Source of the DNA: Tubulanus polymorphus
Lineage: Eukaryota > Animalia > Nemertea
Assembly (NCBI RefSeq): GCF_964204645.1
Contig: NC_134036.1
Span: 2,294,001-2,358,000, forward strand
Reading direction: 5' to 3'
Length of the DNA: 64,000 nucleotides
Every line of letters starts with the position of its first letter. The first letter of the stretch is position 1. Below the pieces are notes generated by a model. The model saw only the letters and a list, made by a program, of their open reading frames with translations. It had not been told where the DNA came from and did not search any database. This document shows, piece after piece, positions 38,231 to 42,573 of the stretch. The position numbers and the translations under genes are program-made.

Positions 38231-38253
38231 ATCACTCTGGTTTCTCTTCAACC
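38231..38253 (+). pseudogene. U5: U5 snRNA copy 3, 5' part (nt 1-23), disrupted by LINE
   Basis: atcactctggtttctcttcaacc, after which the retrotransposon begins. Confidence 0.9.
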
Positions 38254-38270
38254 ACATTGTGTAATTTGTA

Positions 38271-41200
38271 TTGTTTAGAAGATCCATTCAGGTCACTAAA
38301 TCCCCTAAAACAAGGGCTAAAAGACAAGGGTTTACTAGAATAACAAAGGTCAACAATACCATAACTAGAACTCGAATTGATAGATTTTATGTTTCTCAAT
38401 CTGTCACAAATGATGTAGAAACAATAGAACACCTTAACTCGATACACTCAGACCACAAATTAGTGTCAATGACAATTCACACAAACCAACCTCAACGTGG
38501 CAAGGGGTTCTGGCATTTGAACAATGATTTGCTAAATAATGAAAATTATGTAGACATGATTACAGACACGTGGAATAAGTGGCAAAGGCACAAAGGAGTT
38601 TATGAAAATATCCTCGAATGGTGGGATGATGGTAAAAAGCTTATTAAGTCTAAAACTATTAAATTTGCATGTGCCATTTCTAGATCTAGAAACGAATTAA
38701 ATATTTTAGAGAGTCGGGCAAGTAATGGTCAGAACTACGATTATAATAGATTGAAGAATATTGAAACCATAATTAAACAAATCGATGATAATAAAACAAA
38801 AGGGAAAATAATACGATCAAAAATTGAGTGGAGAGAAGAAGGAGAAAAAACATCGAAATTCTTCGCCAACTTAGAGAAAAGGAAAGGAAAAATTAACTAT
38901 GTAAATGCGCTTTATAATGAAAAAAATGAACTTAAAACTAATCAAAGTGAGATAATGGATATCAAAGTTAACTTCTATAAAAAATTGTACACCAAAGAAC
39001 AAACAGACCCCTTTAAACAGACCTATTTTCTAGAAAATCTATCTCAAGTTCAAAACCCAGAAATGATTGATGGTCCTATTACGATTAATGAACTAACGGA
39101 CTCGGTAAAATCTTTTAAATTAGATAAGTCGCCCGGTTTTGATGGAATATCGATTAACTTTTATAGGAAGTTCTGGAATATTCTACAAGATGACTTCCAT
39201 AAAGTAGTGTGCGAATGTATAAACCAAAACACGATTTCAGAATCTATGAAGATGGGCGTCATCACGCTACTCCACAAAAAAGACGAAAAAGCGCGTTTAG
39301 AAAACTGGAGACCAATTACTTTACTGTGTAGTGATTATAAAATAATAACAAAAACTTTAACAAACAGGTTAATCAAAGTAATGACAGATATAATTGACCC
39401 TGATCAAACATGCAACGTAAAAGGCCGGCGTATCCACGATAATTGCCATATAATTCGAGATATTATTCAATACACAGAAGACGAACATATTGAGGCATTT
39501 TTAATAGCCATCGACCAGATGAAGGCCTTTGATCGAGTCGACTGGTCCTTTATGTTTAAATCTCTTGAAGCTTTCGGATTCGGCGAAAATATGATCAAGT
39601 ACATTAAAATGTGTTATGTTGACCCTAAATCGTTGATAAAAAGTAATGGATTTTTAACAGTCCCCTTTTCCCTCGAACGGGGAGTTAGACAGGGATGCCC
39701 GATGAGCGCGTTGCTATACGTCATCATCGCTGAAACTTTATCAATAAAAATCAGGCGTAACGATGAGATTAAAGGAATTAAGTTGCCTGATGGCAGCATT
39801 TGTAAAACGAAACAGTTTGCTGATGACAATACCTTAACTTTAACCAGCACCAAATCAATTGAGGAATTATTCAATGTTTTATCTGATTTCGGAAAAGCTT
39901 CCGGTGCTAAAGTGAACCGCCAAAAAACGGAATGTTTATGGATAGGCGCCTCCAAAAATAGAACTGATACACCTTACAATCTTAAATGGTCGAACAAACA
40001 TATAAAAATATACGGCATGTATTTTGGACATGATGACATAGCTAAGTTGAACTGGGAACGAAAAGTCAGCACAGTATCAAACATATTAAATCAATGGCGT
40101 CAGACAAAACTATCCTACAAAGGAAAACGCGTAGTCATAAATTCATTTATTCTTCCTATATTATGGTATATATCAGAGATATATCCAATACCTAATACCT
40201 ACATGGAAAGGATTCAGAACCAAATTAATAATTTTCTTTGGTCATATGGAAAACACCATGTTAGGGCAGAGGTTATTTATAAACCTTTACGACAGGGTGG
40301 CCTAGCAATTAACAATATAAACTGTAGGATAATAGCCCAGAGAGTGCGAACAATTCTATCTGAAATAAGGAAAGAAACGAAATGGAGACCTTTGCTCAAT
40401 TTCTATCTCGAAAAAATACTCGGACCTGGCTGGTCATTACATTCCTTGATCAACGTAAATTTCGTAAATAAAGTAACTAATAACTTGTATTATAAAAACC
40501 TACTATCTGCATGGAAATATGTGATAACTCTTACCGAACCACAATTATCAAAGCACGATATAAAAAACAATTTATTATTCAATAACCCTTCAATAACTTT
40601 TAACGGCAAAACTTTAAACTACCCAGAGTATTCAGAAATAGGACTAACAAATGTCAAAAATTTATTCGATGAATACGGAAATTACTTGGAACTAGAAAAT
40701 TTTACACCAATTCTCGAAAACGCTAGAAAACATAAAAGGATATACGAGGCGATTCCCAGAGAATGGCGCGTCATCCTTGGTGACGAAAGCTTAGCCGACA
40801 CTAAAAAATCAGCTTTTACGGTAAAATTCCACAATAAACAAAGACTTTTCATTAGTTTAACAATGAGGGAGTTATATAGTTTCATTATACATAAGAAATT
40901 CGGGCACATTGTCCCGATAGGACGAAGGAAAATCGAAGATTTCCTCAATGCAAACGATATCGACTGGGCCCAAATTTGGGAAGATAGCTATCACCCGATT
41001 ATAGACAAAAAATTGAGCGATATGCAATGGCGTTTCCTACATGATTCGTTAGCAACAGCAAACAAACTAGTAACATGGCAAGTTTCAAATGATCCAACCT
41101 GTAAGGTATGCGGTCGAGCGGCCACAAATAGACATGTAATAATTGAATGCCCGGCAGCAATTGAACTTTTTTCTCGATTCCAAACTATAATTGACCAAAT

Positions 41201-41534
41201 AGCGGAACAGCCAACTAACTTAGATAAACGAGTAATATATTTCGGCTTGCCTAGACAGATAATTAGAAATTCAAAAAATAGACATATATGTAATTATGTA
41301 ATAACAGTTCTAAAATGGACACTGTACAAAAATCACCGTAAATCATGTGACGGGGAACAGCAAATAGATCTAAAAAACTATGCTAGGAATTATATTGTAA
41401 ATAGATTAAAACAAGAGATTGCACACAAAAAGAACATACATTTGTGGACCCAAAATGAATCCCTAATTAAAATAACTGAAATGGAATTGGTAATAAATGA
41501 AATACTACTCGATACAATTTATGATATACTGTAA
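38271..41534 (+). CDS. LINE ORF2: C-terminal end of APE endonuclease, reverse transcriptase and CCHC zinc knuckle (N-truncated)
   Basis: APE motifs RIDRFYVS and SDHKLV; Tx1-like GKGFWHLN and EEGEKTSKFF; RT motifs KSPGFDG, WRPITLL, KAFDRVDW, GVRQGCPMS, QFADD; C-terminal CKVC..HVIIEC. The annotated start is not the native start. Confidence 0.92.
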   Translation: MFRRSIQVTKSPKTRAKRQGFTRITKVNNTITRTRIDRFYVSQSVTNDVETIEHLNSIHSDHKLVSMTIHTNQPQRGKGFWHLNNDLLNNENYVDMITDTWNKWQRHKGVYENILEWWDDGKKLIKSKTIKFACAISRSRNELNILESRASNGQNYDYNRLKNIETIIKQIDDNKTKGKIIRSKIEWREEGEKTSKFFANLEKRKGKINYVNALYNEKNELKTNQSEIMDIKVNFYKKLYTKEQTDPFKQTYFLENLSQVQNPEMIDGPITINELTDSVKSFKLDKSPGFDGISINFYRKFWNILQDDFHKVVCECINQNTISESMKMGVITLLHKKDEKARLENWRPITLLCSDYKIITKTLTNRLIKVMTDIIDPDQTCNVKGRRIHDNCHIIRDIIQYTEDEHIEAFLIAIDQMKAFDRVDWSFMFKSLEAFGFGENMIKYIKMCYVDPKSLIKSNGFLTVPFSLERGVRQGCPMSALLYVIIAETLSIKIRRNDEIKGIKLPDGSICKTKQFADDNTLTLTSTKSIEELFNVLSDFGKASGAKVNRQKTECLWIGASKNRTDTPYNLKWSNKHIKIYGMYFGHDDIAKLNWERKVSTVSNILNQWRQTKLSYKGKRVVINSFILPILWYISEIYPIPNTYMERIQNQINNFLWSYGKHHVRAEVIYKPLRQGGLAINNINCRIIAQRVRTILSEIRKETKWRPLLNFYLEKILGPGWSLHSLINVNFVNKVTNNLYYKNLLSAWKYVITLTEPQLSKHDIKNNLLFNNPSITFNGKTLNYPEYSEIGLTNVKNLFDEYGNYLELENFTPILENARKHKRIYEAIPREWRVILGDESLADTKKSAFTVKFHNKQRLFISLTMRELYSFIIHKKFGHIVPIGRRKIEDFLNANDIDWAQIWEDSYHPIIDKKLSDMQWRFLHDSLATANKLVTWQVSNDPTCKVCGRAATNRHVIIECPAAIELFSRFQTIIDQIAEQPTNLDKRVIYFGLPRQIIRNSKNRHICNYVITVLKWTLYKNHRKSCDGEQQIDLKNYARNYIVNRLKQEIAHKKNIHLWTQNESLIKITEMELVINEILLDTIYDIL

Positions 41535-41621
41535 GCTTTGTATACTATGTACTACGTATATTATTAAATACTATGTATAGTATGTTTGTGTATTTTCCGA
41601 CATGAATAATGTATTATTGAT

Positions 41622-41982
41622 ATATATAAATATATGTATATATATGTATATATATATGTATGTGTATGTGTATATATATATATATATATATATATATATA
41701 TATATATATATATATATATATATATATATATATATATATATATATATATATATATATATGTATATATGTATATATATATATATATATATATATATATATA
41801 TATATATATATATATATATATATATATATATATATATATGTATATATGTATATATATATATATATATATATATGTATGTATATATATATATATATATATA
41901 TATGTGTGTATGTGTGTGTGTATATATATATATATATATATATATATATATATATATATATATATATATATATATATATATA
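41622..41982. repeat. (TA)n/(TG)n microsatellite inside the LINE 3'UTR
   Basis: ~360 bp of TA with TG interruptions. Confidence 0.95.
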
Positions 41983-42475
41983 GACTTGTTATTGATATGT
42001 ATATAGACTTGTTAATTCTGTAAATGTGTATATATTGAAGAATGATAGACTATTTGATAACGATGTCTAGTATGTAAATAGGATTCTGTACCGATAACTG
42101 TATATATAATTTTTCAAAATTTTAAGAAAAAAGACAAAAGCAATATAAAAAAAGATAAAAAGTACTGAAAAAAAGGAAAAAAATGTTAAAAAAGAACGAA
42201 AATTTTTTATATCCTATTTGGAAAGAGTAGAACAACCTAAAATGAAAAGAGATAACAGTTATTTAAGAACTTTCCCTCTCGGTCGTAAGGTGTTTTTACA
42301 CCTAATACACGGAGCTAGAGGTGATTTTTTTTTTTCTTTTTAAACTGCATATTCTCGCTACAATCATGTAACAATTATTCAGTCCCCCACATGACTCCAG
42401 TGGGTGCGATGTAGATGTAATGGAGCTTTCCATTAGATAATAAAGTAAGATATTTAAAAAAAAAAAAAAAAAAAA

Positions 42476-42573
42476 GCGTTTAAATCTTTCGCCTTTTACT
42501 AAAGATTTCCGTGGAGAGGAACAATCAATGAGTCTATGGACTGATTTTTGAAGCCCTTCTAACCAGGAGGGTA
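42476..42573 (+). pseudogene. U5: U5 snRNA copy 3, 3' part (nt 24 to end)
   Basis: Resumes exactly at gcgtttaaatctttcGCCTTTTAC; Sm site and 3' hairpin present. Confidence 0.9.

What the first reader, a model, noticed from the sequence alone, without database searches (positions are those of the whole stretch)
38231..42573. Tx1/L1-group retrotransposon inserted precisely into a U5 snRNA gene: candidate U5-targeting retroelement
Seen: the 4222-bp element sits between nt 23 and 24 of U5 copy 3, in sense orientation, 15 nt upstream of invariant loop 1. The three sister U5 genes give the empty site (tcaacc|gcgttt). The target is not a TTTT/AA-type L1 site. Established: Tx1-clade APE elements have repeatedly evolved specificity for multicopy small-RNA loci (Keno in U2 snRNA, Mutsu in 5S rRNA, Dewa in tRNA spacers). 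Inference: hitting a 120-bp conserved gene in a mostly non-genic window suggests a sequence-specific endonuclease for U5. The uninterrupted 1087-codon frame and clean A20 tail suggest recent activity. One insertion cannot prove specificity, and I cannot tell whether this lineage is already catalogued.
Basis: partly seen in the sequence, partly recalled or inferred. Interest (0 to 1): 0.92.

Follow-up and report, generated by a model that had tools for sequence, protein, structure and literature searches.

The report
snRNA-gene-targeting retrotransposon in U5
A young, 5'-truncated LINE-like retrotransposon really does split a U5 spliceosomal RNA gene, and its few sister copies show the family homes to small nuclear RNA genes: mostly U5 at this exact bond, but also U1 and U4.

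Summary
A 4,222-bp poly(A) retroelement (38254-42475) splits the third of four tandem U5 genes, in sense orientation, with no target duplication or loss.

It is a dead-on-arrival copy. ORF1 and about 176 N-terminal codons of ORF2, most of the endonuclease, are missing. ORF2 differs from sister copies by under 0.5%, so the insertion is recent.

The genome holds only nine close copies.
- Three sit in U5 at the same bond, from two independent events.
- One carries a U5-derived tag in its tail but sits in U1 (nt 21/22, 16-bp duplication).
- One sits in U4 (nt 21/22).
- One abuts a retro-copied U1 head.
- Three lie elsewhere.

A sister family hits the same U1 and U5 sites and carries U1 5' heads, which suggests transcription from the host snRNA promoter. 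The closest relatives in other organisms (about 35% aa identity) sit in U1 or 5S rRNA genes.

So this is an snRNA-gene-homing Tx1-like family with a U5 preference, not a strictly U5-specific one. A U5-targeting Tx1 family is already listed in Kojima 2015 (Fig. 3 legend). The new element is several snRNA gene types hit at the same distance from the 5' end. Other first-stage notes on this genome flagged U1 and U5 insertions.

The parts
38170..38210 (+). U5 copy 3 promoter: PSE-like box AAAACACCGTG (38170-38181, about -60) and TATA-like box (38203-38210, about -30)
   Evidence: Read directly. The same AAC(C)ACCG box at -60 to -62 and a TATA box near -30 precede the U1 and U4 genes of this genome. 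That these boxes act as a promoter is inferred.
38231..38253 (+).
   Evidence: Alignment with three intact sister genes; census of about 30 U5 loci.
38254..42475 (+). 5'-truncated non-LTR retrotransposon copy ('family 1'), 4,222 bp, about 69% of the ~6.1-kb longest copy
   Evidence: aligns to positions 1848-6110 of the longest copy, L037.
38254..38481 (+). Remnant of the C-terminal end of the APE endonuclease domain (ends with the ...SDH... motif); about 176 N-terminal ORF2 codons are missing
   Evidence: Translation. The longest copy has Exo_endo_phos at ORF2 residues 9-241. The window copy starts at L037:5366, whereas ORF2 starts at L037:4839.
38271..41534 (+). Open frame of 1087 codons (ORF2 remainder)
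   Evidence: It differs from the sister copies L031 and L037 by 10-15 substitutions in about 3.2 kb.
39273..39941 (+). Reverse transcriptase domain (RVT_1)
   Evidence: Pfam E=1.3e-31. Best solved relative is human LINE-1 ORF2p, E=6e-64, found using the longest copy.
40965..41165 (+). zf-RVT zinc-binding domain
   Evidence: Pfam E=7.6e-9.
41535..42455 (+). 3' UTR (~920 bp) with a TA/TG-rich repeat, an AATAAA signal about 12 nt before the tail, and a terminal ~65 nt conserved between sister families
   Evidence: (hits to query positions 281-347 at 85-93%).
42456..42475 (+). Poly(A) tail, 20 A
42476..42572 (+). U5 snRNA gene copy 3, 3' part (nt 24 to end, including loop 1)
32364..32481 (+). Intact sister U5 gene (empty site)
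   Evidence: Rfam 95.5 bits.
35295..35413 (+). Intact sister U5 gene (empty site)
   Evidence: Rfam 89.4 bits.
45129..45247 (+). Intact sister U5 gene (empty site)
   Evidence: Rfam 91 bits.

Best explanation
The insert is a recently integrated, 5'-truncated and therefore non-autonomous copy. It belongs to a small, young family of APE-type non-LTR retrotransposons of the L1/Tx1 group. A full copy has an ORF1 with a CCHC knuckle, an ORF2 with APE, RT and zf-RVT domains, a long 3' UTR and a poly(A) tail.

The family integrates by target-primed reverse transcription. It goes, in sense orientation, preferentially into RNA-polymerase-II snRNA genes. Its commonest target is U5. There the bottom strand is nicked at one fixed bond about 20-23 nt into the gene. 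The same family also uses U1 and U4 at about nt 21/22.

Second-strand cleavage is 0-16 bp downstream. This gives a blunt junction in the window and target duplications elsewhere.

Sense insertion just behind an snRNA promoter lets resident copies be transcribed from that promoter, and their own AATAAA signal supplies the 3' end.

What is shown:
- the domain architecture;
- the junctions and recurrent sites;
- the independence of the events;
- the youth of the family;
- U1 heads on a sister family;
- a U5 tag in one tail.

What is inferred:
- that the endonuclease or RNP itself chooses these sites;
- that the host promoter drives transcription of family 1 as well.
For: Architecture:
- Searches give the domains.
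- the best PDB match is LINE-1 ORF2p, and R2 is far weaker.

Recurrent U5 site:
- The window copy, and the L004/L005 copy with a different 5' truncation and a 5-9-bp duplication, end at the same bond.
- L004 and L005 are one event copied by segmental duplication.
- Empty-site paralogues exist.
- Sister-family copy L095 lies within 1 nt of the same bond.
- The L006 tail carries A4 plus U5 nt 24-29(32), then A45, a 3' transduction from a U5-resident source.

Other snRNA targets:
- L006/L035 sits in U1 with a 16-bp duplication of nt 22-37.
- Sister-family copy L077 is at the same U1 bond.
- L008/L037 sits in a U4 array gene at nt 21/22.

Enrichment:
- About 64 U1/U4/U5 loci total under 10 kb in 268 Mb.
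- They hold 4 of about 8 independent family-1 events.

Youth:
- ORF2 differs from sister copies by 0.3-0.5%, with pN/pS 0.2-0.3.

Host-promoter transcription:
- Sister-family element B carries U1 nt 1-37 as a head inside a 9-bp duplication at a non-U1 site.
- A second such copy has a partial U1 head.
- A relative in another organism has three stacked U1 nt 1-40 heads.

Lineage:
- Of 11 closest relatives examined, six are flanked by U1 and two by 5S rRNA.
- In a quick tree the window ORF nests with U1-flanked relatives.
Against: - Numbers are small: nine copies and about eight events. U1 and U4 are each hit once by family 1.
- No copy with a complete endonuclease sits in U5, so I cannot link a given endonuclease sequence to a given target.
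- Three or four copies lie outside snRNA genes (satellite, a unique site, a tRNA chimera, the edge of a dispersed repeat), so specificity is a preference.
- The 5' junction of the U4 copy is rearranged (an inverted array segment). Only its 3' junction supports that event.
- Clade assignment to Tx1 rather than L1 could not be tested against reference sequences.
Confidence: 0.78

Rival explanations
1. Strict U5 specificity. The family encodes an endonuclease that recognises only the U5 sequence, and the copies elsewhere are noise.
For: U5 is the commonest target. There are two independent in-situ events, plus a U5 tag showing a third U5-resident source. All share exactly the same bond.
Against: Copies that differ from the window copy by under 1% in ORF2 sit in U4 (L037). 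A family-1 copy about 97% identical over the 601 bp compared sits in U1 (L035). Both insertions are at precise, reproducible bonds, and the U1 bond is also used by the sister family. The sequences around the three bonds share no long motif.
Confidence: 0.08
2. Cross-mobilisation. Family 1's own protein is U5-specific, family 2's is U1-specific, and an unknown one is U4-specific. Because the families share the terminal ~65 nt of the 3' UTR, each other's RNAs are occasionally used in trans, giving the off-target copies.
For: The last ~65 nt are conserved at 85-93% between families, while the rest is 70-80%. Family 1 is biased to U5. Family 2 is biased to U1: one in-situ copy and two U1-headed copies, against one U5 copy.
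Against: No U4-specific family was found. Families 1 and 2 also used the very same bond at a non-snRNA site, since both tails abut the same 9-mer. That fits one shared specificity. The weak A-T-C-T signal at +9 to +12 is common to targets of both families.
Confidence: 0.2
3. Position-specific tethering. The RNP is brought to snRNA genes by the snRNA-type Pol II transcription machinery (for example the PSE-bound complex). It nicks at a fixed distance, about +21 from the start and about 82-84 bp from the PSE-like box, and reads only a short local motif.
For: Three unrelated gene sequences are hit at +20 to +23. All three gene types have an AAC(C)ACCG box at -60 to -62 and a TATA box near -30. 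No long shared motif is present; there is only an A-T at +9/+10 in 10 of 13 flanks. All snRNA insertions are in sense orientation.
Against: Relatives in other organisms keep hitting the same U1 segment (nt 22-28), as expected for sequence recognition. A third poly(A) family uses U1 nt ~71, and Keno uses U2 nt 38/39 (PMC4640811). No U2 hit was seen for these families. The sample is tiny, and the motif and distance were noticed post hoc.
Confidence: 0.18
4. Not an integration into a gene. Instead it is a chimeric retrocopy made by template switching between element RNA and U5 RNA, or an assembly artefact.
For: This family does make chimeras. Copy L038 carries a tRNA-Glu with its trailer fused to a truncated element inside an 11-bp duplication. 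Independent read support for the window junctions could not be obtained.
Against: The window copy is flanked by the full U5 promoter upstream and by the array's normal 3' flank downstream. It is co-linear with three sister repeat units spaced about 2.9 kb apart. The order 5' U5 part, element, tail, 3' U5 part is that of an insertion, not of a chimera. Logan contigs of two runs hold 45-73% of the stretch's words, though these are probably the source sample.
Confidence: 0.02

Closest known systems
U5 snRNA-targeting Tx1 family listed in Kojima 2015 (PMC4494074, Fig. 3 legend: 'U5, U5 snRNA'; a Repbase entry, name not in the text)
   Same: A Tx1-group APE element whose known target is the U5 snRNA gene.
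   Different: I could not see its sequence, host or insertion bond, so identity or kinship is untested. No multi-snRNA targeting is mentioned in that paper. The Utopia paper of the same year lists only U2, U1 (Dada) and U6 (Dada) as reported snRNA targets (PMC4640811).
Keno (Tx1 clade, U2 snRNA genes; fish, frog, lancelet, hydra)
   Same: APE-type, poly(A), sense insertion at one precise bond of a Pol II snRNA gene. It uses multicopy genes as a safe haven.
   Different: Keno uses U2 nt 38/39 only (PMC4640811, PMC4494074). Here the targets are U5, U1 and U4 at about nt 21-23, and no U2 copy was found.
Mutsu (Tx1 clade, 5S rRNA genes)
   Same: Two of the closest relatives found (P0007, P0009) sit in 5S rRNA genes with poly(A) junctions.
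   Different: The window family has no 5S copy. Whether those relatives are Mutsu itself is untested.
Tx1-Mar families and SINEU with U1/U2-derived heads (crocodilians; Kojima 2015)
   Same: Tx1 elements carrying U1-derived 5' heads.
   Different: There the heads are ascribed to template switching, and the targets are Mariner transposons. Here the head ends exactly at the 5' junction used in U1 genes (nt 37), which points to transcription from the U1 start of a resident copy.
R2 (28S rDNA)
   Same: Site-specific, co-transcribed with the host gene, with precise 3' junctions and variable 5' junctions.
   Different: R2 has a restriction-like endonuclease, no APE domain, no poly(A) tail and a single target.
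Dada-U1 / Dada-U6 DNA transposons
   Same: Mobile elements that home to snRNA genes. A first-stage note reports a Dada relic beside a U1 gene in this genome.
   Different: These are DDE transposase elements and work by a different mechanism.
Ty3 and Dictyostelium TRE5-A (position-specific integration at Pol III genes)
   Same: Only under the novel reading: the site is set by distance from a transcription complex rather than by sequence.
   Different: Those elements target Pol III genes through TFIIIB. No such tethering is shown here.

Membership tests
L1/Tx1 group of APE-type non-LTR retrotransposons | ORF2 with an N-terminal APE endonuclease followed by RT | tested here: met
   The longest copy has Exo_endo_phos at residues 9-241 and RVT_1 at 519-717. 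The window copy keeps only the endonuclease tail plus RT.
L1/Tx1 group of APE-type non-LTR retrotransposons | RT closest to the L1 group rather than to R2, R1 or others | tested here: met
   Against PDB sequences, LINE-1 ORF2p scores E=6e-64 over EN+RT. R2 proteins score 1e-5 to 2e-11 over RT only. No R1 or TRAS endonuclease scored at or below 1e-3.
L1/Tx1 group of APE-type non-LTR retrotransposons | C-terminal zinc-binding domain and a poly(A) tail | tested here: met
   zf-RVT E=7.6e-9; A20 tail.
Tx1 clade (as opposed to L1 proper) | RT groups with Tx1 reference elements in a phylogeny (RTclass1/Repbase) | not testable with these tools
   No Tx1 or Repbase reference sequence was available. 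The tree holds only unnamed relatives.
Tx1 clade (as opposed to L1 proper) | Target-specific insertion into multicopy genes or repeats, not TTTT/AA sites | tested here: met
   Recurrent U5, U1 and U4 bonds. Relatives sit in U1 and 5S genes. Flanks do not start with A-rich L1-type sites.
Tx1 clade (as opposed to L1 proper) | ORF1 not of the L1 Transposase_22 type; carries a CCHC knuckle | tested here: inconclusive
   ORF1 of the longest copy has a CX2CX4HX4C motif and no Pfam hit at all. It is frameshifted in that copy. Relatives' ORF1 proteins show weak zf-CCHC.
Strictly U5-specific element | Most copies flanked by the U5 3' part at one bond | tested here: not met
   Three of nine copies (two of about eight events) are in U5. 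One is in U1, one is in U4 and four are elsewhere.
Keno | Insertion in U2 snRNA genes with the 3' flank starting at U2 nt 39 | tested here: not met
   No flank of any of the 40 family-related 3' ends is U2.
L1-mediated chimeric retrocopy | snRNA part fused 5' of a truncated element, the whole flanked by a duplication at an unrelated site | tested here: not met
   The window copy lies between the two halves of a promoter-bearing array gene. Copy L038 does meet this definition, with a tRNA.

The most novel reading that the evidence does not exclude
Families 1 and 2 do not read the snRNA sequences. They are tethered to the shared Pol II snRNA-gene transcription machinery. They integrate at a fixed distance, about 21 nt past the start and 82-84 bp from the PSE-like box, in U1, U4 and U5 alike, helped only by a short A-T-C-T-like motif 9-12 bp beyond the nick. 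That would be the first position-specific LINE at Pol II snRNA genes, analogous to Ty3 and TRE5-A at Pol III genes.
Probability: 0.17. Interest if true: 0.85.

Novelty: new variant of a known kind. Interest (0 to 1): 0.6.

Why it matters
Site-specific LINEs are natural models for targeted, RNA-templated gene insertion, and snRNA-gene targeting is the least documented class.

This genome offers a very young family (under 1% divergence) whose few copies mark the same bond of U5 repeatedly. The same family also marks equivalent bonds of U1 and U4.

Sister elements carry U1 heads that suggest use of the host snRNA promoter.

If one protein really serves three unrelated targets, it bears on a general question. 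That question is how APE-type endonucleases acquire and switch specificity, or whether chromatin or transcription-factor tethering does the work.

The closest relatives found elsewhere are mostly U1-flanked, with two in 5S rRNA genes. I found no paper describing a U1-targeting LINE in the library I could search.

For the window itself the practical message is modest. One of four tandem U5 genes is inactivated by a dead retroelement copy.

Tried and rejected
Read laying:
- Junction support, polymorphism and U5-head transcripts are therefore untested.

Naming the clade and organism:
- The Atlas gives only generic RT clusters.
- Run and organism names are coded.

Rfam on the other flanks:
- At a permissive threshold the non-snRNA flanks showed no RNA family.
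- The only hits were spurious mir-297 matches to the TA/TG repeat of the 3' UTR.

Looking for more 5' ends of family 1:
- Only one copy reaches the ORF1 start.
- An 89% relative on C1 is broken by a MITE-like inverted repeat and has no matching 3' end.

The 5' junction of the U4 copy:
- The sequence upstream of its ORF1 start is an inverted piece of the U4 array spacer.
- No U4 nt 1-21 is present, so only the 3' junction counts for that event.

The careful maximum-likelihood tree did not finish in the time allowed. A quick tree was used instead, and the window ORF is a long branch in it.

Considered and rejected:
- L1-type TTTT/AA targeting, because of the flanks.
- An R2-like element, because there is no restriction-like endonuclease.
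- A single insertion spread by duplication, because the 5' truncation points and duplications differ between the window copy and L004/L005.

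
Full report
OBSERVATION

Rfam finds four U5 snRNA genes on the + strand of the window. Three are intact (32364-32481, 35295-35413, 45129-45247). The fourth is a weak hit at 42442-42572.

Reading the sequence and aligning the four units gives the structure of the third unit:
- Its promoter and first 22-23 nt of U5 run up to 38253.
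- Foreign sequence follows.
- A run of 20 A (42456-42475) closes the insert.
- U5 resumes at 42476 with the very next nucleotide, then continues into the normal 3' flank of the array.

The insert is therefore 38254-42475, which is 4,222 bp. It is in sense orientation, with neither target duplication nor deletion.

Two qualifications apply. First, across about 30 U5 loci the conserved part begins at ACTCTGG, which is 38234 here. The bond is therefore +20 to +23 depending on the true start.

Second, the 1087-codon frame (38271-41534) begins inside a truncated endonuclease domain. Pfam sees only RVT_1 and zf-RVT. The translation starts with the last ~65 residues of an APE domain.

Comparison with the longest copy in the genome (L037) shows what is missing:
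- L037 has an ORF1 with a CCHC knuckle and an ORF2 with Exo_endo_phos at 9-241, RVT_1 and zf-RVT.
- L037 is about 6.1 kb.
- The window copy lacks ORF1 and about 176 N-terminal ORF2 codons.

The window copy was dead on arrival.

WHAT KIND OF ELEMENT

Against solved structures, the best match by far is human LINE-1 ORF2p, at E=6e-64 across endonuclease and RT. R2 proteins match only weakly, and only in the RT.

ORF1 has no L1-type Transposase_22 hit. The target is not TTTT/AA. This fits the L1/Tx1 group. With the targeting behaviour below, it fits the Tx1 clade as described in the literature. I had no Tx1 reference sequence, so clade membership proper is untested.

In 5.8 billion proteins the closest relatives are only about 35% identical, and none carries a name.

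A search of the whole 268-Mb genome with the last 357 bp found nine copies at 93-100% identity, plus more distant relatives. I read their 3' flanks, fetched 10 kb around each and mapped the 5' ends.

1. Window copy. It is in U5 with a blunt junction and is truncated in the endonuclease.

2. L004 and L005 (C12:9.337 Mb and C12:10.968 Mb).
   - Both sit in a U5 variant at the same bond.
   - Both are truncated about 650-700 bp from the 3' end.
   - Both have a 5-9-bp duplication made of U5 nt 24-28(32).
   - The two share junctions and more than 6 kb of 99.5%-identical flank, so they count as one event later copied.
   - Uninterrupted paralogues of this variant exist (L061, L064).

3. L006 (C10:1.833 Mb).
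   - It is in a U1 gene between nt 21 and 22.
   - It has a 16-bp duplication of nt 22-37 and an intact U1 promoter upstream.
   - Its tail reads A4, then U5 nt 24-29(32), then A45.
   - That is a 3' transduction, so its source copy sat in a U5 gene (G at nt 24) at the same bond.

4. L008/L037 (C2:9.495 Mb).
   - It is in a gene of a U4 tandem array between nt 21 and 22.
   - Its 5' side is rearranged.

5. L002/L031 (C3:18.32 Mb).
   - Its tail abuts a 9-mer.
   - The 9-mer is followed by U1 nt 1-37 and then by a second, roughly 70%-related element (B).

6-8. L003 lies in a ~62-bp satellite. L007 lies at a unique site with an 8-12-bp duplication. L009 is a template-switch chimera carrying tRNA-Glu plus its trailer inside an 11-bp duplication.

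So of about eight independent events, two are in U5 (three counting the tagged source), one is in U1 and one is in U4. The roughly 64 U1, U4 and U5 loci add up to under 10 kb of 268 Mb. Chance is out of the question. All snRNA insertions are in sense orientation.

Only 3 of about 30 U5 loci, 2-3 of about 22 U1 loci and 1 of 12 U4 loci are occupied at these bonds.

SISTER FAMILIES

The terminal ~65 nt of the 3' UTR are shared with a sister family, 'family 2'.
- Family 2 sits in U1 at the same 21/22 bond (L077).
- It sits in U5 within 1 nt of the same bond (L095).
- It also sits at several non-snRNA sites.

Element B is a family-2 copy at a non-U1 site. The same 9-mer that precedes its U1 nt 1-37 head also follows its poly(A) tail (L098). 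The head was therefore part of the retrotransposed RNA. It ends exactly at the 5' junction seen in U1 genes (nt 37). The simplest reading is that the RNA started at the U1 transcription start of a resident copy.

A second family-2 copy has a partial U1 head (nt ~11-39) at another non-U1 site. The family's 5' UTR is itself U1-like.

Family 1's tail in L002 abuts the same 9-mer. Both families therefore nicked the same bond there too.

A third, unrelated-looking poly(A) family sits twice in U1 near nt 71.

RELATIVES ELSEWHERE

I fetched contigs for 11 of the closest proteins and scanned them with Rfam.
- Six are flanked by U1.
  - Poly(A) junctions fall at U1 nt ~22-28.
  - One has three stacked U1 nt 1-40 heads.
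  - Others have one or two heads.
- Two sit in 5S rRNA genes.
- None sits in U5.

In a quick tree the window ORF nests, as a long branch, among U1-flanked relatives. The U5 preference therefore looks derived within a mainly U1-targeting lineage. This is an inference.

AGE

ORF2 of the window copy differs from L031 and L037 by 10-15 substitutions in about 3.2 kb. That gives pS ~0.01 and pN/pS 0.2-0.3 on small counts. Identity to L032 and L036 is 99.3-99.9%.

No copy that I saw has both ORFs intact. I did not look for one or single one out.

HOW IT LIKELY WORKS

The proposed mechanism has four parts:
- Target-primed reverse transcription from a bottom-strand nick at a fixed bond about 21 nt into the snRNA gene.
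- Second-strand cleavage 0-16 bp downstream.
- Transcription of resident copies from the host promoter.
- 3' end formation at the element's AATAAA, with occasional read-through.

How the site is chosen is open. The sequences at the three bonds share no long motif. A post-hoc tabulation shows A at +9 and T at +10 in 10 of 13 flanks, followed by C/T.

All three gene types have an AAC(C)ACCG box at -60 to -62 and a TATA box near -30.

Three readings remain:
- a relaxed endonuclease specificity shared by both families, which I favour;
- cross-mobilisation between families of different specificity;
- tethering to the snRNA transcription machinery.

KNOWN OR NEW

Tx1-clade elements targeting U2 (Keno), 5S (Mutsu), tRNA spacers and repeats are established (PMC4494074, PMC3706591). 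Kojima 2015 lists 'U5, U5 snRNA' among known Tx1 targets in the legend of Fig. 3. The text gives no name and no description.

The Utopia paper states that only Keno, Utopia, Dada-U1 and Dada-U6 had been reported for snRNA genes. My searches found no later paper on U5- or U1-targeting LINEs.

So the target class is catalogued. The behaviour of one young family across U5, U1 and U4 at an equivalent position is not something I could find described. The same goes for the mostly U1-flanked relatives.

Other first-stage notes on this genome flagged U1 insertions and the L005 U5 insertion. My searches checked several of these loci.

LIMITS

- No contig looked human.
- I built no consensus of the element.

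Noticed in passing
L087/L089 (G000 C10:2391186-2398727) and L088/L090 (C10:2099185-2103213): A third poly(A) retroelement family (3' end ...GGTAGTATCTGAGGC) splits two U1 genes near nt 71. One copy is ~7.4 kb with a 14-17-bp duplication. The other is ~3.9 kb and 5'-truncated in the RT. This is a second, distinct U1 target site in the same genome.
   Followed up: partly
L002 1850-1990 with L098 (G000 C3:18324355-18335200): Sister-family element B carries U1 nt 1-37 as a 5' head. It is bracketed by a 9-bp duplication at a non-U1 site. A family-1 copy ends at the very same bond just upstream. The downstream flank runs into a dispersed repeat with at least 40 copies.
   Followed up: partly
L122 (G000 C3:13562400-13562720): A second full-length sister-family copy has a partial U1 head (nt ~11-39) at a non-U1 site. 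The family's 5' UTR itself resembles U1 nt ~24-45, as if U1 pieces had been stacked over time.
   Followed up: no
L038 (G000 C5:19923500-19933499), around oriented position 8730-8815: Template-switch chimera: a tRNA-Glu with its 3' trailer is fused to a truncated family-1 copy inside an 11-bp duplication.
   Followed up: partly
L014, L020, L037 (G000 C2:9.486-9.502 Mb): This is a U4 tandem array of ~1.85-kb units. Each unit carries a ~200-bp fragment of a 78-80%-related element about 560 bp downstream of U4. One segment of the array is inverted, next to the family-1 insertion.
   Followed up: partly
L111 1-400 (NCBI GCA_029980105.1 contig): A relative in another organism is preceded by three tandem U1 nt 1-40 heads and followed by U1 from nt ~26. 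This fits repeated cycles of U1-promoter transcription and re-insertion into U1.
   Followed up: partly
L115, L116, L117 (ENA assemblies): In the hosts of several relatives, U1, 5S rRNA, histone and U2 genes lie within a few kb of each other. They appear to form one composite multicopy unit that the elements occupy.
   Followed up: no
window 41535-42455 and the L003/L007 3' UTRs: The 3' UTR holds a variable TA/TG repeat. It causes indels between copies and spurious sub-threshold mir-297 hits. Open frames of 107-145 codons overlap the 3' UTR in several copies and have no Pfam hit.
   Followed up: no
G000 C12:8.84, 9.34, 10.97 and 11.37 Mb (L041, L042, L044, L061-L064): A U5 variant family, with a T or C at nt 24 and altered 5' ends, is dispersed by segmental duplications on contig C12. 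The L004 locus looks like an L005-type locus that lost ~2.7 kb between two U5 genes.
   Followed up: partly
window 3036-3108: A tRNA gene (Rfam 55 bits) lies far from the U5 array.
   Followed up: no
L120 (G000 C1:14488300-14489000): An 89%-related ORF1 fragment is interrupted by a MITE-like element with long terminal inverted repeats.
   Followed up: no
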